A stretch of 60,556 nucleotides of DNA, filler included, from Dugesia japonica (lineage: Eukaryota): the NCBI GenBank assembly GCA_001938525.1. It is 5 parts of 5 records of this genome, joined end to end, with 100 filler letters (N's around TTAATTAATTAA, not from the genome) between each part and the next. Parts side by side here need not be neighbours in the genome. Positions count along the whole stretch, not along the records: positions 33,575 to 45,122 come from MQRL01640439.1; 4 more parts are not named here. One strand, written 5' to 3'. Position 1 is the first letter of the stretch. Each line of letters begins with the position of its first letter. This document shows positions 33,575 through 45,122 of the stretch, piece after piece. The notes below the pieces were generated by a model. It was given only the letters and a program-made list of their open reading frames with translations. It was not told the DNA's origin and made no database searches. A program made the position numbers and the translations under genes.

Positions 33575-33909
33575 TTTAAAAATAAAAATTAAAATTCATA
33601 ATTAAAATAAACCAATAAAATTTCAATAAAATCTAAAGAATTCAGTAACAAAGATCTATTGCATTGAATCGATCCAGAAGTCATCGTGTTCTTGAGGAAG
33701 ACCATTGTAGAAAATTTGAATTTCTTTAAAAATACATTTTATTTTGATCAAAACTTTTTCTTTATTTTAATAAAATCTCAAATGTGATCAATGATTAAGT
33801 CCAACAATTATTCTCACAATAATTGTAATTTTAATATTAAGACCAATAAATAATAAACATGTCTAGGGAATTTTAATATTAAGTCTTTCCGAGGAATTCT
33901 GGCCAGATG

Positions 33910-34043
33910 ACCTTGAAACACTTCGACCAATAAGATCGCAGGATACTATATCACCTTGATCTTGAAATATTTCGATCAATCATATCGCATGATACTATAT
34001 CGACTTGATCTTGAAATGTTTCGACCAATCAGATCGCAGGATT
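33910..34043. repeat. 49-bp tandem repeat (~2.7 copies) carrying CCAAT-like boxes
   Basis: Units start at 33912, 33961, 34010 (CTTGAAA...TTCGACCAATCAGATCGCAGGATACTATATC). Confidence 0.92.
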
Positions 34044-34459
34044 ATATAAAAAAATATTTCATTGTCTTCAAAATAAATTTTTCGACATAGTCACCCAAAA
34101 TTCCAGGGTTCGTGGCTTCTTTGATCAAATCCAATGATGTCTTGGTCGCCATATTAGTTAAATAAAAAAATTCGCAACTCTCAATAATTTTTTATTTGTT
34201 ATTACAAGTGTTTTTGATTAAAGTAAAATAATGATGAAGAATAATTTATAGTATTCAAACGAAAATCTGAGAAATTTTTCAATTAAATATTTTAAAAATA
34301 TCGATTTTTAATTTAATGAAATATTTTATTTAACACGTTTCAAAAATAAAATTTAATATTATGTATATAAAAATTTAAAAATCTCTCAGATATTTAAAAG
34401 TATGAATGATTCTTACAAATTGGAAATCATTTTTCAATTTATTAAAATTTTAGGATTCT

Positions 34460-35100
34460 ATAGAGTTATATAATACACATAATTAACCCTCTAGAGTACT
34501 GCAATACACATAATGAACCCTATAAAGTCATATAATACATCCAATAAACCAAACAAATATGCAAAATATGTTTAATATACACAAAAAAGCAATAAATCTT
34601 ATATACATAATAAACCCATTATAAACACATACTATATACATATTTAATTTAGTGTATGGGAACCATTGGATTTCTATGTATAAGTTTATATTAAGTTATA
34701 TATGTTTATTTCAGTAACTTTATTGGGGATATTTGTTTGTATATTATGCGACTATATGTTTTATATGACTATATTGGGTTTATTATACGCATTTAACTGA
34801 AAGTATGGAGTTTGTGATGTCATTTTACTGGTTCAATTGAGTTATTTATGTGTATTTAATGACTCTATTAGTTAATTTTATGTACTGTATGTCTTAAAAG
34901 ATTTATTGTGTGTATTATATATCTTTATTAAGTTTATTGTATGTATTATATTACTATATTTGGTTTATAGTATGTATTTATCTGTATGTATTAGGTTTAT
35001 TGTGTGTATTTAAGTGACTTTATTGTATATTTGTGTGTATTATATAACATTATTGGGTGTAATTTATGATTTTATTTTGTGTATTAAAATTGATAGTTGT
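34460..35100. repeat. Foldback-like degenerate minisatellite
   Basis: Left arm repeats AATACACATAATAAACC, right arm repeats its complement GGTTTATTGTGTGTATT, switching near 34645. Confidence 0.7.
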
Positions 35101-35583
35101 ATATAGTTTTGTAATTTTAAATCTTTTATAGTTTTCTACTGTTATGGTCGACTAAAACGTCAACGAGCCAGTAATATTTGTCATCTCATTCCGCGACTAC
35201 CGATACCAAATATGTCGCTATAACACATTCCTATCCATACGCTATTTTCTTTGGAGCAAATATTCTGCGTAAATGATAGTACTTGTTTAGGTTATGTTTA
35301 CTACAAATTTTACATTTCAAAATGAACATTTTACTAATCAAATTGGACGTTTTTTAAAAACGTTGGAATTTCAAAAAAATAACATTCATAGTAGACCGCC
35401 AGTATGAATAACTGCTCATATCTTATGTTGTTAAGACTACCAAGTGCATTAGTCAAGTTGGCAAGCCTTTGCACACCGTCATTATAAAAACCAACTAACT
35501 TTTAAACTAAATTTGCAGACAAGAGTTTCATTTTTTGAGTCCACATTTGAAATTTGCAACTAAGTTAACAAACTTGGTAAATA

Positions 35584-36692
35584 TACAGTTCTTATGTATA
35601 ATTTCTTAACATATATGTATATGCATAGTATCTACAAATAAAATTATTTTTAAAAATAGCTCCAAAAGATACTGAGTGGACTGACGAAAGCATGTTTCCA
35701 ACACATTTCTGACGGAAACAAATTATTTCCTCAGAATAATCAGAATCAAATCCAGATATTCCTGTTGTAAATCATCGACCAAAAAAATATAAGAATATCA
35801 GTCGAGATGAGAAAAACCTTTTGATAAAATGTTACGAAGATTGAAAAATGATCAACGAATCAGTGGAAATCGTTGGGATTAATTAAAGCACTGCAATGGA
35901 AATTATATCTGAATATAAAATAAATGGTGGAGAATTTATAAAAACAAACATGGTGGAAAAAGAAATAACAAATTATAATAAGAATTAAAAAATGATAATG
36001 AAAAAATAGTTGAGGAAAATCCGTATATTACTTTTAAAAAAATCGTGATAACATTTTAGAGAATAAATGAATAAATTTGAGTATTGCCACAATCTAGAAT
36101 GGATTAAAAAATTGCGGATCAAATTAAAATGCTCATCAATCAAACCCGAGCGCAGAAACTCATTAAGAGCAATGGATGCACGCAAGGATTATGCATTATA
36201 ATTTTTGAGCAACGTCCCAGAAGATCGGCAATTAATTATCTATATTGACAAATCCAGTTTTAATTATCATTTACGGCGAAGAATATCTCGATCAAAAATT
36301 AACACACCAACAATGAGAGGACAAAATGTTTCACTTATTGCGACTATGAAAATCGATGGAATAATATGACATCAAACAATTTCTCACTCTGCCGTTAATT
36401 AAAATATTTTCTCCACATTTCTTCAAAGATTATTTGAAAAACTAGCAGAAAAAAATTGAAATGCGGTATGGTTAATTTTGGATAATGCAAGCTTTCATCA
36501 TACTCAAGAAGTGCGTAAGATTATCGAACAGATAGGTCAAATATTAATTTTTTTACCACCATATTTGCCAAAAATGAATACTATCGAAGAGGTATTTTCG
36601 AAAATTAAATTTTCTGCTACGAATTTGTTGGCGTATCCAAATTTGGAAGACGTAATAATTGAGTCTATTGCAACCGTCACTTTTACAAATTG
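35584..36692 (+). mobile_element. Tc1/IS630-family DD34E transposon remnant
   Basis: HTH region (GIN*STA..I), YIDKSSFN, RGQNVSLI, LDNASFHH...FLPPYLPKMNTIEE with 34 residues between D and E; TA-CAGT at ~35584 as possible left end. Confidence 0.88.
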
Positions 36693-36881
36693 CTACCACA
36701 TGGATTGTTGGCAATAGTCATCTATTGCCAGTTCAGTAACAATCCTTAACCGGGCGTCCATGTGGCGTGGTGAAGGTAGAAAAGTGGAAGTAAGCATTTA
36801 TATTGTAATTAAATTTTACTGAGTAACAATANNNNNNNNNNNNNNNNNNNNNNNNNNNNNNNNNNNNNNNNNNNNNNNNNN
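36692..36881 (+). ncRNA. Putative HDV-like self-cleaving ribozyme at the 5' end of the RTE-like element (3' part hidden in gap)
   Basis: P1 TACCAC(36694-99)/GTGGTG(36767-72); structured J1/2; P3-L3-P3 GCG-TCCATGT-GGC (36754-66, one mismatch); P1.1 GG (36775-76); a P4-like hairpin closes at the N gap (36832-36881). Confidence 0.55.
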
Positions 36882-36961
36882 GGAACAAGCGTAGAAATGC
36901 GTCTTGAAAATCCTGAACAGTCCGTAAAAAAAGTGCTTATTGATCAATAAAATCCTAGAAC

Positions 36962-37620
36962 TACAACCTAGTTGGCTTGTTTTAATACAGACTGATCATG
37001 TACTTCTATGAAACGATGCTTAGGAGTGATAAGCATTGGAGAGTGCTCAACACTTGGACAGAAATGGCCCCCGATCTGGATGGATCCGAACAAATAACAC
37101 ATCAATCTATTTATAGTATCACAACTTAGTGGACCTGTTGAAATACACAGGTTGATTATGTGGTCCTATGGAGTGTATAACTCATATACTCTTTATGAGT
37201 AAGTTAGAAAAAAGCTGCAGTGGCGAAGGTATTCGACGTACCTTATAAGCAAGGGTGAACAAAGCAACAGCATTGTAGCAGCTGTAACTTATATCNCCGT
37301 GTCTAGGACTGTTCTTGTCAGATTTAGTTAGGAAACCAACTAATTACCTACCTTTACGGATGGTTTAACGAAACAATATAACATCACAATTAGTTGGCTG
37401 GTTGTGAAAAATAAACTGATTAAGTGGTTCCTATGAAATTAAACTTATACATTCTTAATGGATTATAAGTACGTATTAATATGTTGCAGTGGCAAATTTT
37501 CTCGAATTACGACTACGACGTGCCACATGAACAAGGGTGTATATAGCAGCAGCATCATAGCTGCTGTAATTTACTTATACGACGTTTGATGTTTCCTTAT
37601 AGTATAGCTGATTTAGTTGA
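36962..37620 (+). repeat. Three diverged tandem copies of a multi-hairpin motif
   Basis: Copies at ~36962-37038 (partial), 37118-37330, 37383-37620 sharing ACAA..TAGT, TGAT.A.GT, YCTATG; copies 2 and 3 also share TGCAGTGGC, CGACGT, CAAGGGTG, GCTGTAA, GATTTAGTT. Confidence 0.8.
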
Positions 37621-37850
37621 CGAATCATGCTCCCTGAGATTGACCGCATTCTGAACAGTCTGGTATGCCACTTAAAAATATCTGAATATCCGGTGAAAGC
37701 TGACTAGGAAGTTTGTCTGATTAAGGTGGGTGAGAACCAGCTCTATGACCTTTTGAACAGAGGATTTGAATCCCGCTAGAAATATTCAATGTCGTAGGAC
37801 CAGAAGTCAGCCGGCGGTATATCTGTTAATATACCAAAAACAAAAAACTT

Positions 37851-38776
37851 ATGATAATGTTCACTAATAATATAACTAGTCTAACAATGAGGACCTCATT
37901 TTTGTCGCCAAGATTGAGGTTTGGTACCTGGAACATTAGCGGCTTATACATTGAGTATAAACGTCTTAGCCTGATTGATATGTTTAATGAGCTGTCATTA
38001 GACCCTTTAATTCTGTCTGAGACACATCAAAATCCAACAGAATGTAGAAATGATGACGAAGAACTTGCAATATTCTATATAGATCTGAATGCCGGAATCG
38101 TATCCATGAATGACTCTACAGGAGGAGGTAAGCTCACCAGGGGACGTTCAGTAGTGCATGTAATCCATGGGGAATATGGCGACGACTTATATATACTGGG
38201 AGAGTCAGTATCGGAAGTGAACCGTAACCTTAACAAATTACAGGCAGTGCTCGAAACCATGAGTATCAAGATTAGCTCTTCAAAAACAAAGGCTATGAAA
38301 ACAGCTGGACACTTTGAGGACATATCTATATTGCTCTGCGGGGTCGTCATTGAATTATTAGACAAATTCCGATATCTGGGCAAATTGTTGATGAAACCGG
38401 TAAAATCGATAGAGAAATAGAGGCACGTTTAGCTTTAGGTCAAGTAAAACTCTGTTATATGTCACTTTTGCTTGGTAAGGCCAACTTTCCTAAATATATC
38501 AAGTTAAAACTCATCAGAGGTATCATCTTTCCAACCATTTNNTATTGGGCCGAAACATGGAACANCACTGCAAGGTATGAGTCAATACTTGAGGAATTTC
38601 TCAACGATTGCAGGCATAAATGTCTAAACACAAGTCGATTCGATCATATCAGGAACGAAATTCTGCAACGTAGGATAAACCTCCCTGCTGTAAGAACAGT
38701 ACTGGCTTCCCGCCAACTGCTGTTCAGAACAAAAATCTTGAACGATATTTATTTGTCGAAATGTCTAAGATATTAA
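37851..38776 (+). pseudogene. RTE-like endonuclease/reverse transcriptase, internally deleted and frameshifted
   Basis: ORFs 37851-38420 and 38459-38776 with the motifs above. Confidence 0.88.
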
Positions 38777-40110
38777 ATTCCCGGTGATATCAAGAGATTT
38801 GGATCAAGCGGATCAAAGATTGAGTGCATATGGACCGGTGACAAAGAATGGTTAGAGTCAATTTCAGGAAAGACCATTGACTGGGATTCCACTTTATCAG
38901 TCCGCAAGGCTATTAGTAACATCGGCAACCTAGGAGACCGAGGTGGACAACAGCAGATCCCACGTCTACTTAAGACCTGGCTCCATTGATTAAGATGTAA
39001 ACAATGACTATTTACCGCCGCCCGAAGGGTTGACATGGACAGACATATTGGAGTTCGAAATGGTAACGTGCAAATAGTTGGTCCCCACGCCTGCCAGCAA
39101 TGTTGATATGCATGCATAAGCATAGGACAACTCTGAAGACATATCCTTACATGCGAAAATTCTAGGACAATGACTAACTCTAAGGTTAAGAATGGAGATA
39201 CACCTAACCCAACGTCAGATGAGTGACAATTCATTATACCGAGATAAAGAGGATGATGGCATTGCAAACCTTAAACTGGTCTTGGTGGCACTGATCTGGA
39301 AATCAGAGATCACTTGTTTTTGAAGAGAGTATCCCGAGCATAACCTATATTGTCAGGGGGTCTTCAGGTTCATGGGTCCCAGGAAACTCGAAAAACCAGT
39401 CCATGTGTCTACAAGCTATGAAAATGTGTAAATATCTACTCCAATTTCTGAGGAGATCTTCAAATGACCTTGATAATGGTAAAAATTCATGTAGTTATTA
39501 GGCGAAGTTAAAATACAATCACTAACAAGGTGAGTACGCCGAAATGTACTAAAAAGTCACAATGTTACCCTTACAAGAAGCTGGCTGGTTGACTATCCGG
39601 TGGCAGCTGACCAGTCACTGTAAGTCTAGAGACAAGACACAGGTACTCAGAAAGTAGAAACGATTATGAATAACACGGACAGATATAACCGATCAGGGAA
39701 TGACTAAACGATCATACTACCATGATAATAGTAACTCTGATCAGTACGAGAGGAACAGCAGTTTTGGATCAATTAAAATATACCAATGACGACTTACTGG
39801 GTTATCAAGCTTAAAAATAGGCGCTTGGCAGCCACTATATTTCAAGGTAACCGTCATAAACGTGAAACAATATATGAGAGATAGAGACCGAACGACTTTA
39901 AGTCTGAATCTCACCTAAATATCATGATAAAAGCGCTCAATAATATTACCTATCGACACAAGTCATTGGGTGTGGCCTAGCCATATACTTAAACTCAGAC
40001 CTTTCTATGCAAGTGGATTGGATGTTCGAGCCATCACAATGGTATACGTGTGAGCCAAAATAAGTCGCCTTTTAAGTGGCTTCAATATGATTTATGAGTT
40101 CCCAAATGAC

Positions 40111-40392
40111 CGGTTAGCCAATGATTGACCAAAGCAATCGAAAGAATCCAGCCCCAAACCATTCTTCATGAACGGTTAGCCGGTGATTGATTATTATGAT
40201 TGAAAGAATCTAGCCCCAAGCCTAAATAAATATAAATCTAGATGTAGCAATAACAGCAAATGAGCTATAACAGTTTGGATAAGCGGTTAGCTGGTTATTA
40301 ACTGTAGTGATTAAAGAATCTAGCCACAAGCCATCCTTTATCGATTATTAGCTGGTGATTAACCACTACAGTTGAAATAACCCGGCCACAAG
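40111..40392 (+). repeat. Four ~50-nt hairpin repeats with variable centres
   Basis: CGGTTAGC..TGATT-variable-GAAAGAATCYAGCCMCAARCC at 40111, 40173, 40284 and a degenerate copy at ~40346. Confidence 0.88.
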
Positions 40393-42804
40393 CACTATGG
40401 AAACTGCTCAACCATAGACAGACGTTCAATTCATCTTATAACCTTCACAAAGTGTTAGGATTAAAATTGTTGAGAAAGCAATAACTGATTTGTCAAGCTT
40501 AAAAATGGGTTTTTGGAGACTACAACATTTTATTTCGATGTAAATGCTAATTGACGAGAGGTTGTTGGTCCAATACGGGATTCTACGGCTACAAAACTGT
40601 TCTTAGGAACGACGTCGAATAAACCAGCAACTGTAGCAAAAGTATATTTATAAATTAAATTTATGTATCTTTTGTTCTAGTTATCCATTAAGACTTTTTC
40701 ATCAATAATCCTTAATAACTGTTCGGTCAGTTTGGAAAACTAATCGAATCATTAACATCAGAATTTAACTCCATAAATTTATTAAAATAAAAACTATAAC
40801 ATAATTATTTGGTTAATCAAACAAATTAAAGTGCTTCAGTTGCGAATTATTTTCTAATAAATTTAAAATTTTAATTTAAAAATTTAAGCAAATCATTATC
40901 TGTTTTCGAAATTTTATTTAAAATAACTTTCACAAAATTTTTAAACAANACATCATTCACAACTAAAATATTTAAGTTTTACTTTTAAAAATTTTTAAAC
41001 TATATAAATATTTTTATATAAAAAAATATTTGAATTAATCTTTAACTAAACATAATTTTCGTACCAAAAATTTATTTAAATTTCTTGATTAATTTGTGAC
41101 TTCCTATTCATCAAATAAGAGATTTTTTAAAAATTAATTCCAATCAAAGCACAAAAATTTTAACTCGCTTCAAAACCACTCACAATAACTATGTACTATA
41201 TGTATATTATATATACAGACATAAATAAAAACCTAATGAGCAAATTATCCAATTTTTTGATTTGATTTGTAAAATGTATAATTTGAAGTGTAAAACAGAT
41301 ATATGCAGTTTTTAATTCTCTATCGATTGATACAAAATTCCAAAAGAAATTTCATTTAAATAAAAATAAACAAAATCGAAACAAAAAAATTATAAATCAA
41401 AATTCAAAACTCAGTACAAATTTCGACATCAAATTCTGCCCTGAAAGAATTTTGATCCCAGGGAGAGGGGATTGGGGCAGTTCTGAACTATGTAGATACT
41501 AATCATTTAATTGAAATTTAAGAAAAATGCTCTAAGTCCGAATTATCAAGATTTTACAAAATTAATTAATTGACTAAAAACAACATGTATCAATAGAAAA
41601 ACTTTAGAAAGTAAAGATCCAAAATTCTCGAAAATTATTACAGTATTATAATTTAATAATTAATTTAAAACTAAATTTTTGTATTTATTCAAAAAACACA
41701 AAATGACATAAGTACATAAAATCAAAAGTCTTTGTGCCATAAGAAGCTACTTCTATTAAAAAACACCCATAGAATCAACATTTTTCGCAATAATATTCTC
41801 AGTAATAACATTGAAAACATGTTGAATATTAGATGTGTCCGTTGCACAAGTAAAATGTGAATATATAATCTTTTCTTTTTTCTTATTTAACATTTCAAAT
41901 GTTTTCCTAATATATTCTGATGTTTCTTCAAAATTATTGTTACCTAATTTATAAAAAATTGATAAAATATTTCAAGAAATTCATGAAATATAAAAAGATT
42001 TTCCCAATTAAAACTAAAGATGGATTTATTTTGATTGATTTTAATGGGGAAATATGATTTTAGAATTTATGGAAATTGTTAAGTAAATTTTATCATAACG
42101 TACTAAAAGGTATATGTTAAAATATTCAATAAAGCGGATTATTGACCGTTTAAATTTAACTTTTGGTTATTAAACTTGATACCAAAGAAATGGTACAAAC
42201 CATTGGCATTATTTATTGAGTCTTAATATTCTTAAATTGTGTTAGTCAATTTAAATACACTTTGATTCTAGTCTAAAATGATCTTATAAATTTCTAATGG
42301 TAGTGATTTCTCTCACAATAATGGTGAGAAAAATTACAGATATTTACAGATAGTTTTATCTTTACATAGATAATTTGTTGAATACTTTAATACAGAAATA
42401 TGCTATTACCCTAATAATACTTGTGGTATAAAGTAATTAAAACTTTGAGCACATAAAAATAGATGTGATATTATTATATTCTCTTTACAATCAACCAACT
42501 AATATAACTTTTATATATTACATAAAATTCTTATAATTATTCAAATCTTTGTTTCTTGAGAGGTTATTCAAAATCTAAGTGTAGGTATTTTTGACAAAAA
42601 ATTTAATAACAAAGCCACTTTAAAAAGTTACAAAATACAATAAATCATCAAATATTAAAACATTTCACTGGCTTCACAATAATGACATTGTAATATTATT
42701 GCACTAACTCTGCGGTTAAATATATTCGATTTAAATGAAACTAGATATGATTTTATTGGTTTTAGTCTAATATATTTTGTTAAGGAGTTCAGTTCCGTAA
42801 TATA

Positions 42805-42828
42805 TATTAGGTTGTCCGAAAAGTAATG
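42805..42828 (+). repeat. Isolated mariner-type TIR
   Basis: TATTAGGTTGTCCGAAAAGTAATG, similar to the TIR-like sequence at 9182. Confidence 0.5.
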
Positions 42829-43016
42829 TTAAAGTTGCAAATAATCCAATTTAAGTATTATAATATTTTTAAATTTAATTGTGTTTAAATGTTTTATTTG
42901 CATTAACCTTAATAGTCAAATAATATGTCAATATTATAAGTAAAGTAAGCGCTGCTACTTATTAGAATCATTCGCTTTATAGAATTAAATTCAAAAGGAT
43001 TGTTCTTCGTCCACCT

Positions 43017-45122
43017 TGTAAGGATTAAAAATTACAATTGAAAATTTGAAAAAGAAAATGTTAAAAGATTTCAAGAAATTTTTAAAATATTTAAAAACTT
43101 TGTTTAAATACTCAGCTTTTAAAAAATAGTTTTTGAAGAATTGAAATTTCGTTTCATAAATAAAATTTTATTGAATTTAATAGAATTTTCAGAAAGTTTT
43201 TTTGTAACTAATATGGCGACCAGCGCTTCAATGGACCTCATTCGAGAAGCCCTACATCCAGGAATTTACCGGCATGGTGACGACATTAAAGAGTTTATCA
43301 ATGGTTGCACCAAATACTACGAATGTATTGGTGTAAAAAAAGGATAAAAACCTCTTGGTGGTTGGAGAAGCATATGAATGCAAAGATGAATTTTTAGATT
43401 TTGAGGACCAACTAAGGAAAGGGTTCCACAAAAGGACTACTCTAATACAAGACTTGGTAGAAGTTTTAAAATACAAGAGAACGGATGAACTCGTTTATTT
43501 GTACAAGAAAAGGATTTTAGCTTTGGTCAATAAAATCTTTGCACATAACCTATACAAAGAAGATATGAAAAAAGAATTAATATTTAATAGTTGCCGCGAT
43601 AAAAGGATGCAAAAAAAGATTAAAGGAGGCAAACTAGCTAACTCGGAAGAGATATTTGAAATAATAAAAACAAATGATGAACTAAAGGAGGACCTGAAAA
43701 AACAGGCAATATAAATACGGTGGAGAGTTGCAGCAGAGGCATGACAAAAGAACGTTTCACATGAGTTAACCTAACTCAAAGTGAATCCAAAAAAGAAATT
43801 AAATGTTGGTCATGTCAGAAGATAGGTCATATCACCAGAAGTTGTCCCGAAAAGAAAAGAACGTAATACCCATGCGGATCAGAGAATTTTATAAGAAGAA
43901 ATTGTGACAGAATTAGATGTTCAAGATGTGGAAAAAATGGACATCATACAGAACAATGTTATACTAATTTAGAGAAAAAGGGTGTGTGAACTAATGACAG
44001 AAGACAGCAGAATAACGAACAAAGAAACCAAGCAGCACTATACAGTCGAAGAGAGGGAATAAGCAGAAGATATGGCGATAGTAACAGATTTCCAAAACAA
44101 AGTGGGAAGACATCAGTTAATAATGGATTCAGGAAAAGAGACGGCGATAGATATGCAAACGCAATAGTAGAGGAGGATGATAAAGAGAGGAGATAATATT
44201 TTTTATTGCGATGAGGAGACAAACAGGTATAGAGAAGAGACCCCAAACAGGCAAGCTCCATCTAAAGTCTAAGTCTAATTTAAGCAATGAACTGAAAAAC
44301 AATCCAGATCGCGATATACATATGTATAGTAAAAGTAGTTTAATTAATAGTATAAAGGATGAAAGTAAAGAAGAAAGAGTAGGCAGAAAGGTTAATGCGT
44401 TTTTAAAGAAAGATTAAAGAGATATGTATAATACAGATATCAAGATAATGAAAGAAACGAAAAATGATGATAACAAAATAATGGTATTAGAAGAGAATGA
44501 ACAAGTACTAATAAATTATGATAGAATGCAAAGTAAACCCAGTGTGGAAGTTAGAATTCAAGGAAGATATATGGACTGCCTTTTGGACACAGGTGCAAAG
44601 ATAAACGTGATGAGGCTAAATATTTTTAGAAGTCTGACAAATGTGGAGCTGATAGGAACTGATGACGTGTTAAAATGTGCAAATAATAGCAGAATGAACA
44701 TTGTGGGTAAGATATATGTAAAAGTGAAGATCAGAAACAGTAAGAAAACAGCACAATTCACCGCAGTGGAATAAATGAGTCAGAATCTTGTTGGAGGAAT
44801 AGACATAAAACGCCAGTTTGGATACCGTTTAACGAAAGAAACAAAGGATTTTGAGNNNNNNNNNNNNNNNNNNNNNNNNNNNNNNNNNNNNNNNNNNNNN
44901 NNNNNNNNNNNNNNNNNNNNNNNNNNNNCTTTAAAAATTAAGATGACAAAGCGAGACGAGAAACTGAAAAAGGTAGGTAGGTATTCTCAAAAGGACTAAA
45001 ATAGCATTATATAACTCTAGGTAGAGCGGATCCAAAAGGCAAGACTGCGAGTGAATCCAAAGAAATGACACCTATTAAGCAAAGAACTGAAATTTTTTGG
45101 TCACATAATAGATAAAGAAGGA
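43017..45122 (+). mobile_element. Degenerate Ty3/Gypsy element, 5' half (LTR, PBS, gag with three Zn knuckles, PR, RT scraps)
   Basis: TGTAAG at 43017, PBS TGGCGACCA at 43214, gag MDLIREALHPG, CWSCQKIGHITRSC and CSRCGKNGHHTEQC plus a broken middle knuckle, CLLDTGAKIN, RLRVNPKK/FFGHII. Confidence 0.9.

What the first reader, a model, noticed from the sequence alone, without database searches (positions are those of the whole stretch)
36962..37620. Triplicated, covarying multi-hairpin RNA motif in the 5' region of an RTE-like retroelement
Seen: three diverged copies keep the same layout (long hairpin, then YCTATG, then a second hairpin) although the primary sequence drifts. Hairpin 2 stems are GATGCTTA/TAAGCATT (37015-37037), ACTCATA/TATGAGT (37180-37200) and ACTTATA/TATAAGT (37443-37470), with a compensatory C-G to T-A change. 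Copies 2 and 3 also share TGCAGTGGC, CGACGT, CAAGGGTG and a GCAGC/GCTG hairpin. Inference: structure is being conserved at the RNA level. A transcript self-cleaved by the upstream ribozyme would be uncapped, so these could be tandem cap-independent translation or RNP-assembly domains, or an unnamed ribozyme. I do not recognise the motif as any known family. Best candidate for an undescribed system here.
Basis: partly seen in the sequence, partly recalled or inferred. Interest (0 to 1): 0.8.

Follow-up and report, generated by a model that had tools for sequence, protein, structure and literature searches.

The report
Diverged tandem repeats in LINE leader
The flagged stretch is a real set of three old, diverged direct repeats, each with the same two hairpins, in the long non-coding leader of a broken single-ORF LINE retrotransposon; it most resembles the tandem "monomer" leaders of other LINEs, and there is not enough evidence to call it a new structured RNA or ribozyme.

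Summary
The three copies are real. Units B (37112-37376) and C (37377-37640) align along their whole length (63% identity in ungapped columns, local-alignment z=29). Unit A (36956-37040) shares only the first ~70 nt (z 5-6).

The array lies directly upstream of a 210-nt unique stretch and the ATG (37851) of a broken APE+RT LINE gene. That gene is at most 36% identical to anything in the protein libraries.

No Rfam family matches, so no ribozyme of any kind is detected. The covariation claim is weak. Hairpin 1 has 3 double changes in 22 pairs, reached by 41/500 shuffles. When the structure is taken from one copy only, the other copies keep no more pairs than random substitution would (P 0.02-0.85). 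The hairpin-2 "compensatory" pair depends on which alignment is used. Folding z-scores are modest.

Best reading: a monomer-plus-tether LINE leader that predates this insertion, probably promoter or regulatory DNA, whose hairpins may or may not act in RNA. One distant relative (L003) also carries a duplicated long hairpin in its leader. No other copies of this family could be fetched, so the RNA question stays open. Interest is low to moderate.

The parts
35680..36830 (+). Neighbour: degenerate Tc1/mariner-like DNA transposon remnant; the transposase C-terminal piece lies at 36478-36714
   Evidence: Pfam DDE_3 E=4.8e-11; sequence read. The outer bounds are approximate.
36832..36881 (.). Run of N (gap or mask) that hides the true 5' boundary of the repeat-bearing leader
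   Evidence: left as it stands
36883..36955 (+). Leader stretch upstream of unit A; holds the first GAACAGTC motif (36915-36922)
36956..37040 (+). Unit A (partial): hairpin 1 (about 36954-37010), TCTATG, hairpin 2 (37016-37036, with a G-U extension to 37015-37037)
37041..37111 (+). A-specific spacer with no counterpart in B or C
37112..37376 (+). Unit B: hairpin 1 (37112-37172), CCTATG, hairpin 2 (37180-37200), TGCAGTGGC (37216-37224), CGACGT (37234-37239), CAAGGGTG (37250-37257), imperfect GCAGC/GCTG hairpin, tail holding GAACAGTC in inverted orientation (37307-37314)
37377..37640 (+). Unit C: hairpin 1 (37377-37437), CCTATG, hairpin 2 (37443-37470), TGCAGTGGC (37485-37493), CGACGT (37516-37521), CAAGGGTG (37532-37539), 8-bp GCAGCAGC/GCUGCUGU hairpin (arms within 37539-37574)
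37641..37850 (+). Unique non-repeated stretch ('tether') between the last unit and the ORF start; holds the third GAACAGTC (37653-37660)
   Evidence: (no significant similarity to A or C; z=3.8 against B)
37851..38773 (+). Broken single LINE gene, given as one part. It keeps the N-terminal start of the APE endonuclease and the C-terminal part of the reverse transcriptase plus the region after it. About 258 of the 1242 residues of the nearest full-length relative are represented.
38774..40640 (+). Tail of the element with no recognisable coding similarity. It holds four diverged ~45-65 nt direct repeats at 40088-40400. The 3' end is placed only by the drop in G+C near 40575-40640.

Best explanation
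The stretch is the long 5' leader of a single-ORF, APE-type (RTE-like) LINE retrotransposon. It is built like the monomer-type leaders of rodent L1. It has a partial unit A, two full units B and C of about 265 nt that arose by tandem duplication, and then a 210-nt unique 'tether' before the ATG.

The duplication is old and was carried by the family's source copies, not made at this locus. Each unit inherited the same two inverted repeats (hairpin 1, YCTATG, hairpin 2) and the same short conserved blocks.

The most likely role is the element's own promoter or regulatory DNA. That DNA is also transcribed into the leader of the sense RNA, where the hairpins may add a second, unproven function.

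Shown here: the repeats, their layout, their position next to the ORF start, and the absence of any known RNA family. Inferred: that the array belongs to the LINE, that it predates the insertion, and that it has a promoter role.
For: - Repeat structure and significance.
- Position next to the gene: the ORF starts at 37851 with the very N-terminus of the endonuclease aligned to residues 31-84 of a 1242-aa relative. The leader therefore has to lie upstream.
- Relatives are single-ORF elements of 3.6-4.3 kb with APE then RT.
- Units are followed by a unique tether. This is the layout described for mouse and rat L1: monomers plus a ~250-bp tether (PMC5381506; PMC9022269).
- G+C of the leader (0.34-0.37) matches the element body (0.37-0.42), not the flanks (0.21-0.26).
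- B and C differ at 37% of ungapped sites. If that divergence had arisen in place, the adjacent 189-codon open frame would stay free of stops in only about 0.4-1.2% of simulations. So the duplication predates the insertion.
- Conservation between B and C comes in short blocks separated by spacers of variable length. The 8-mer GAACAGTC occurs exactly three times, only in this leader and in both orientations (0.13 expected). That pattern is typical of protein-binding DNA motifs.
- The only relative with a long leader (L003, 631 nt) also owes its length to an internal duplication.
Against: - No second genomic copy of this family could be fetched. That the array belongs to the LINE and travels with it is therefore inferred, not shown.
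- The 5' end is hidden by an N run.
- No promoter could be tested. An arthropod-style Inr/DPE reading of TGCAGTG...GACGTG fits only unit C, and only one base off register. The host is unknown.
- Units 63% identical in ungapped columns are far more diverged than the monomers of young rodent L1 (my own knowledge).
- RTE-clade leaders described so far are short; for example the ribozyme lies ~112-147 nt before the AUG in Perere-3 (PMC8501958).
- The invariant G-U pairs and the better fold on the sense strand are not explained by a purely DNA-level role.
Confidence: 0.55

Rival explanations
1. The module hairpin 1 - YCTATG - hairpin 2, with the downstream blocks, is a selected sense-strand RNA element present in three copies. 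It might be a binding site for the element's protein, a cap-independent translation element, or an unrecognised ribozyme.
For: - A consensus hairpin 1 of 22 pairs is shared by all three copies, with 89% of cells paired and 3 double changes.
- Five pair positions are mostly G-U, and the consensus fold is better on the sense strand (-10.2 against -6.1 kcal/mol).
- Hairpin 2 sits at the same offset in all three copies with different stem letters in A.
- The leader is slightly more structured than the rest of the element (mean z -0.95 against -0.30, P=0.026).
- In the distant relative L003, two leader copies about 65% identical keep all 29 pairs of a long hairpin with 3 double changes. With the structure taken from one copy only, retention has P=0.007-0.017.
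Against: - Covariation is within the controls: 41/500 shuffles, and P 0.02-0.85 when the structure is taken from one copy.
- The whole B-C unit has a consensus-fold z of only -1.6 on the sense strand, and -3.0 on the antisense strand.
- The third hairpin is degraded in B without compensation.
- The hairpin-2 double change depends on the alignment and could come from a templated insertion.
- No Rfam hit.
- A covariance model of hairpin 1 finds nothing in the relatives.
- GAACAGTC occurs in both orientations.
Confidence: 0.2
2. The repeats are not part of the LINE. They are an older local tandem repeat or pieces of another, unclassified element, and the LINE (or its 5'-truncated copy) landed next to them.
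For: - The 5' boundary is unknown (N run at 36832-36881).
- The locus is a pile-up of transposon remnants: DDE_3 and RVP pieces.
- The described relatives have leaders of only about 160-630 nt.
- No other copy shows the link between the repeats and the LINE.
Against: - The ORF keeps its own start and N-terminus, so some leader must lie upstream.
- G+C of the repeats matches the element, not the AT-rich background.
- No tRNA-like or other small-RNA head of the SINE type is present.
- No copy of the unit lies elsewhere in the 11.5-kb piece.
Confidence: 0.15
3. The duplication is real but functionless. The shared hairpins are ancestral inverted repeats that each copy inherited and that are decaying neutrally.
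For: - Pair retention is no better than random placement of the substitutions.
- AT-rich sequence readily gives 7-bp stems: 4-8% of windows.
- The element copy itself is dead: a broken gene with large internal loss.
Against: - The duplication predates the insertion, so diverged units persisted in the source lineage.
- Conservation is block-wise, with 9/9 and 8/8 matches inside a background of 63% identity.
- The GAACAGTC motif recurs.
Confidence: 0.1

Closest known systems
Mouse and rat LINE-1 5'UTR: tandem monomers plus tether (PMC5381506; PMC9022269)
   Same: Head-to-tail homologous units of a few hundred bases lie directly upstream of a unique ~200-250-nt tether and the first ORF. The first unit is partial. 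The region is non-coding.
   Different: Here the LINE has a single ORF of the APE-RT (RTE-like) type, not L1. The units are only 63% identical in ungapped columns. The region is AT-rich rather than a CpG island. Promoter activity, transcription starts and variation in unit number are all untested.
Dictyostelium TRE5-A modular UTRs (A-, B- and C-modules; PMC3159450)
   Same: A LINE whose UTRs are built of discrete modules that can be duplicated. There the 5' module is the promoter and a 3' hairpin is needed by the element. Internally deleted derivatives keep the UTRs.
   Different: TRE5-A has two ORFs. No sequence similarity was tested or found. The module functions in TRE5-A were shown by experiment; nothing was here.
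Ribozymes at LINE 5' ends: HDV-like (R2, L1Tc and others) and twister variants in the RTE-clade element Perere-3 (PMC8501958; PMC3774820)
   Same: Structured RNA in the leader of single-ORF LINEs.
   Different: No match to any Rfam ribozyme model in the piece. Those ribozymes are single copies at the very 5' end and close to the AUG (~112-147 nt in Perere-3). They are not three units spread over 700 nt.
Leader of the distant relative L003 (Logan run SRR26849178, protein P0005)
   Same: A single-ORF APE+RT LINE. Its 631-nt leader holds two ~65%-identical copies of a long hairpin, about 305 nt apart.
   Different: Protein identity to the window's pieces is only ~39%. There is no detectable leader similarity (z=-0.1; no covariance-model hit). 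The likeness is one of architecture, not shown homology.

Membership tests
LINE leader made of tandem monomers plus tether (L1-monomer type) | Two or more homologous units head to tail, upstream of the first ORF | tested here: met
   B-C z=29; A-B z=5.4 and A-C z=6.1; all units on the same strand as the ORF
LINE leader made of tandem monomers plus tether (L1-monomer type) | A unique stretch between the last unit and the ORF | tested here: met
   37641-37850 has no significant similarity to A or C, and z=3.8 against B
LINE leader made of tandem monomers plus tether (L1-monomer type) | The units belong to the element: they are shared by other copies, with varying unit number | not testable with these tools
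   No other copy was found:
LINE leader made of tandem monomers plus tether (L1-monomer type) | The units carry transcription start sites or promoter activity | not testable with these tools
   Only motif hints: recurrence of GAACAGTC, and an Inr/DPE-like spacing in unit C that is one base off (my own reading)
RTE-clade LINE | A single ORF with an N-terminal APE endonuclease followed by reverse transcriptase, and no ORF1 | tested here: inconclusive
   The window keeps the APE start and the RT C-terminus in the right order. Relatives are single-ORF APE+RT. No coding signal lies upstream. The gene here is only a remnant.
RTE-clade LINE | The RT groups with RTE in a phylogeny | not tested
   No named RTE reference came back from any search; the hits carry only generic names
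RTE-clade LINE | A short 3' UTR ending in short tandem repeats | tested here: not met
   The tail after the last recognisable coding similarity is ~1.8 kb, and TRF finds no terminal short repeat. The relative L003 does end in (CCATTA)n.
Known self-cleaving ribozymes (HDV-like, twister, hammerhead and others) | A match to the family's covariance model | tested here: not met
   Rfam 15: no match at E<=1 in the piece, and only snoRNA/sRNA noise at E 4-9 in 36300-37900
Evolutionarily conserved structured RNA | Covariation above controls | tested here: inconclusive
   3 double changes in 22 pairs, reached by 41/500 shuffles. The structure-from-one-copy test gives P 0.02-0.85. Only three related sequences are available.
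Evolutionarily conserved structured RNA | Folding energy clearly below shuffled sequence | tested here: inconclusive
   Single copies z -1.2 to -2.9. Hairpin 1 consensus z -5.4. Whole B-C unit z -1.6. Leader mean z -0.95.
IRES or cap-independent translation element | Drives internal initiation | not testable with these tools
   No sequence criterion exists for this

The most novel reading that the evidence does not exclude
Single-ORF LINEs of this poorly sampled lineage carry, in their leaders, duplicated long-hairpin modules that are kept by selection on the sense RNA, for example as a 5' recognition or translation element. The window's hairpin 1 - YCTATG - hairpin 2 unit and the duplicated hairpin of L003 would then be two instances of an undescribed class of LINE cis-RNA.
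Probability: 0.15. Interest if true: 0.55.

Novelty: new member of a known kind. Interest (0 to 1): 0.3.

Why it matters
If the main reading holds, tandem-monomer leaders are not confined to rodent L1. They would have arisen again in a distant, single-ORF LINE lineage in an AT-rich genome. That is a modest addition to what is known about how LINEs build their own promoters.

If the hairpins prove to be selected RNA elements, they would be a handle on how single-ORF LINEs translate or package their RNA.

As it stands this is one dead copy of an unsampled family, so its main value is as a pointer to what to collect.

Tried and rejected
- Other copies of the family. None was found by exact look-up of the ORF product; by a full HMMER search of 1.84 billion representatives, where the best hit is 36% identical; by a metagenome scan with the conserved-block pattern (0 hits); or by a metagenome scan with the protein (0 confirmed). 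The genome-contig scan gave one match, in a bacterial bin, taken as chance. The phage collection gave none.
- Close relatives of L003, for a covariation test. The nearest is 43% identical.
- Known RNA families. Rfam on the piece, on the leader at lax thresholds, and on the relatives gave nothing relevant. No tRNA was found.
- Homology of hairpin 1 with the L003 hairpin. Both begin with UUAGUGG-like letters, but the covariance model and local alignment find nothing. Rejected.
- Hammerhead reading of CUGAYYA...GAAA. By my reading of the sequence, the core G is not there and there is no stem II. Rejected.
- A second, deleted copy of the leader at 39566-39674. Only weak collinear matches (z<=3.2). 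Rejected.
- Similarity between the 5' units and the 3' tail repeats: z<=1.9. Rejected.
- Coding potential of the repeats. None, apart from one sub-threshold chance Pfam hit.
- Inr/DPE reading. It fits unit C only, one base off. Kept as a remark only.
- The prokaryotic promoter scan was not used, because it does not apply to a eukaryotic element.

Full report
**Setting.** Only 33575-45122 was used.
- The piece is AT-rich (G+C 0.21-0.26), with a richer block from about 36075 to 40575 (0.32-0.42).
- That block holds at least two transposon remnants.
- From about 35680 to 36830 lies a degenerate Tc1/mariner-like element. Its last transposase piece (36478-36714) matches Pfam DDE_3 at E=4.8e-11.
- A run of 50 N follows (36832-36881). 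It was left as it stands.
- From 36883 on lies the element of interest.

**The element.**
- The open frame starting at ATG 37851 begins with the N-terminus of an APE-type endonuclease. It then runs straight into the C-terminal part of a reverse transcriptase (Pfam RVT_1 positions 146-194).
- A second piece, in another frame, continues the region after the RT.
- A HMMER search of 1.84 billion representative proteins gave only 22 hits, the best 36% identical.
- The full-length hits are proteins of 966-1242 aa with APE then RT.
- They are encoded as single ORFs on contigs of 3.6-4.3 kb.
- No named RTE reference came back, and no phylogeny was made.
- Against the nearest relative (P0001, 1242 aa) only about 258 residues are represented, within outer bounds 37917-38725.
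- The gene is therefore broken. By count there is one change of frame; at least one (probably two) large internal losses that together remove most of the endonuclease and the N-terminal two thirds of the RT; loss of recognisable similarity for roughly the last 290 residues of the relative; and a few ambiguous bases.
- After 38773 there are about 1.8 kb with no coding similarity. This tail includes four diverged ~45-65 nt direct repeats at 40088-40400 (z 5-13.5).
- The 3' end is placed only by the fall in G+C near 40575-40640.

**Checking the observation.**
- The three copies are real.
- Local alignment against shuffles gives z=29 for B-C and z=5.4 and 6.1 for A-B and A-C.
- B (37112-37334) and C (37377-37624) align over 262 columns at 65% identity including gaps. 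In ungapped columns they differ at 37% of sites.
- A shares only its first ~57-71 nt with B and C (36956-37022).
- After hairpin 2, A continues with 70 nt that have no counterpart in B or C.
- All three copies have YCTATG.
- Hairpin 2 has perfect 7-bp stems at 37016-37036, 37180-37200 and 37443-37470.
- Such stems occur in 4% of 48-nt windows of the element and 8% of the piece.
- Hairpin 1 is a shared hairpin of 22 consensus pairs.
- Against column-shuffled alignments its consensus energy has z=-5.4 on the + strand and -3.6 on the - strand. The difference comes from several invariant G-U pairs.
- TGCAGTGGC, CGACGT and CAAGGGTG are shared by B and C.

**Is the structure covarying?** Not demonstrably.
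- For hairpin 1, 89% of cells are paired and 3 pairs change on both sides. That is reached by 41 of 500 shuffles.
- I then redistributed the observed substitutions at random. With the consensus structure, retention looked better than chance for some pairs of copies (P 0.002-0.14). That test is biased, because the structure came from the same sequences.
- With the structure taken from one copy's own fold, the other copies keep no more pairs than expected (P 0.02-0.85).
- For hairpin 2, the C-G to T-A double change between B and C appears in the local alignment. In the MAFFT alignments the 3' arm of C lies in a C-specific insertion, and the 3' arm of B aligns with C's loop. A templated insertion would give the same picture without any selection on RNA.
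- The third hairpin (GCAGC/GCTGC) is 8 bp in C and has two uncompensated mismatches in B. This is my reading.
- Single-copy folds have z of -1.2 to -2.9.
- The whole B-C unit has a consensus-fold z of -1.6 on the sense strand and -3.0 on the antisense strand.
- Over 120-nt windows the leader is slightly more structured than the rest of the element (mean z -0.95 against -0.30, P=0.026), and about equally so on both strands.

**Known RNA families.**
- Rfam 15 gives no match at E<=1 in the piece. In 36300-37900 at E<=10 it gives only snoRNA/sRNA noise.
What lies upstream is a DNA-transposon remnant and a gap.
- No tRNA-like head is present.
- The repeats do not code. The indels between B and C are not multiples of three, and the short open stretches have no family match.

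**What it most likely is.**
- The order is: partial unit, full units, a unique 210-nt stretch, then the ATG. This is the architecture described for mouse and rat L1 leaders, namely tandem monomers that carry the transcription signals, joined to ORF1 by a ~250-bp tether (PMC5381506; PMC9022269).
- Modular UTRs with a promoter module are also known in Dictyostelium TRE5-A (PMC3159450).
- Three observations favour a DNA-level regulatory role:
  1. Conservation between B and C comes in short exact blocks with spacers of variable length, including a 13-nt length difference between TGCAGTGGC and CGACGT.
  2. GAACAGTC occurs exactly three times in the window, all in this leader, twice forward and once inverted (0.13 expected).
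  3. The G+C of the leader matches the element body.
- The duplication predates this insertion. If B and C had diverged by 37% in place, the neighbouring 189-codon frame would stay free of stops in only 0.4-1.2% of simulations. So diverged units were carried by the source lineage of the family. This holds only if the units belong to the LINE, which is inferred.

**Hints for the RNA reading.**
- Hairpin 1 has invariant G-U pairs.
- There is an unexpected parallel in L003, the one relative with a long leader (631 nt; Logan run SRR26849178).
- L003's leader holds two copies, 22-140 and 327-452, that are 65% identical.
- Each copy folds into a long hairpin whose 29 consensus pairs are all kept, with 3 double and 5 single-sided changes. 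The one-copy test gives P=0.007-0.017.
- There is no detectable similarity between that hairpin and the window's.
- No close relatives of L003 exist in the libraries to extend the test.

**Limits.**
- No second copy of the window's family could be obtained by any route.

**Verdict.** The reading as a new covarying RNA motif or ribozyme is not supported by the statistics available, and the ribozyme premise fails. The most economical explanation is a monomer-type LINE leader.

**Other safeguards.** The covariance model R1 was made only from the three non-coding hairpin-1 copies and was used only for searching. The consensus line that the tool printed was not used.

Noticed in passing
L002:1-148 and L002:4140-4258: The closest full-length relative (P0023/P0001, on a JGI metagenome contig) is flanked on both sides by eukaryotic 28S rRNA sequence (Rfam LSU_rRNA_eukarya, E=2.6e-21 and 2.3e-36). 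The two flanks overlap in model positions. It therefore looks like a single-ORF APE-type LINE inserted in rDNA.
   Followed up: no
L003:22-140 and L003:327-452: The leader of a distant intact relative holds two ~65%-identical copies of a long hairpin. All 29 consensus pairs are kept, 3 of them with changes on both sides. The contig ends in (CCATTA)n.
   Followed up: partly
L004:153-229: A weak match to metazoan SRP (7SL) RNA (37 bits, below the gathering score of 70, E=8.6e-7) lies in the leader of another relative.
   Followed up: no
window 40088-40400: Four diverged ~45-65 nt direct repeats (67-79% identity, z 5-13.5) lie in the non-coding tail of the element. With the unit bounds I tried, no convincing shared fold was found.
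   Followed up: partly
window 36915-36922 (+), 37307-37314 (-), 37653-37660 (+): The 8-mer GAACAGTC occurs exactly three times in the window, all in the leader and in both orientations (0.13 expected by chance).
   Followed up: partly
window 36478-36714 and about 35680-36830: A Tc1/mariner-like transposase remnant (Pfam DDE_3) lies directly upstream of the N run.
   Followed up: partly
window 44424-44771: An ORF with a retroviral-type aspartyl protease signature (RVP, E=2.7e-5), probably a fragment of an LTR retroelement. The surrounding 43100-45122 is strongly purine-skewed on the + strand.
   Followed up: no
window 37963-38082: A 120-nt window at the start of the coding remnant folds well below shuffles on the sense strand (z=-3.9 with 60 shuffles). 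A 151-nt window around it does not (z=-0.6 with 200 shuffles). Unresolved.
   Followed up: partly
window 33908-34042 and 34902-35086: AT-rich tandem repeats with periods of 49 and of 31/94 nt lie in the upstream flank.
   Followed up: no
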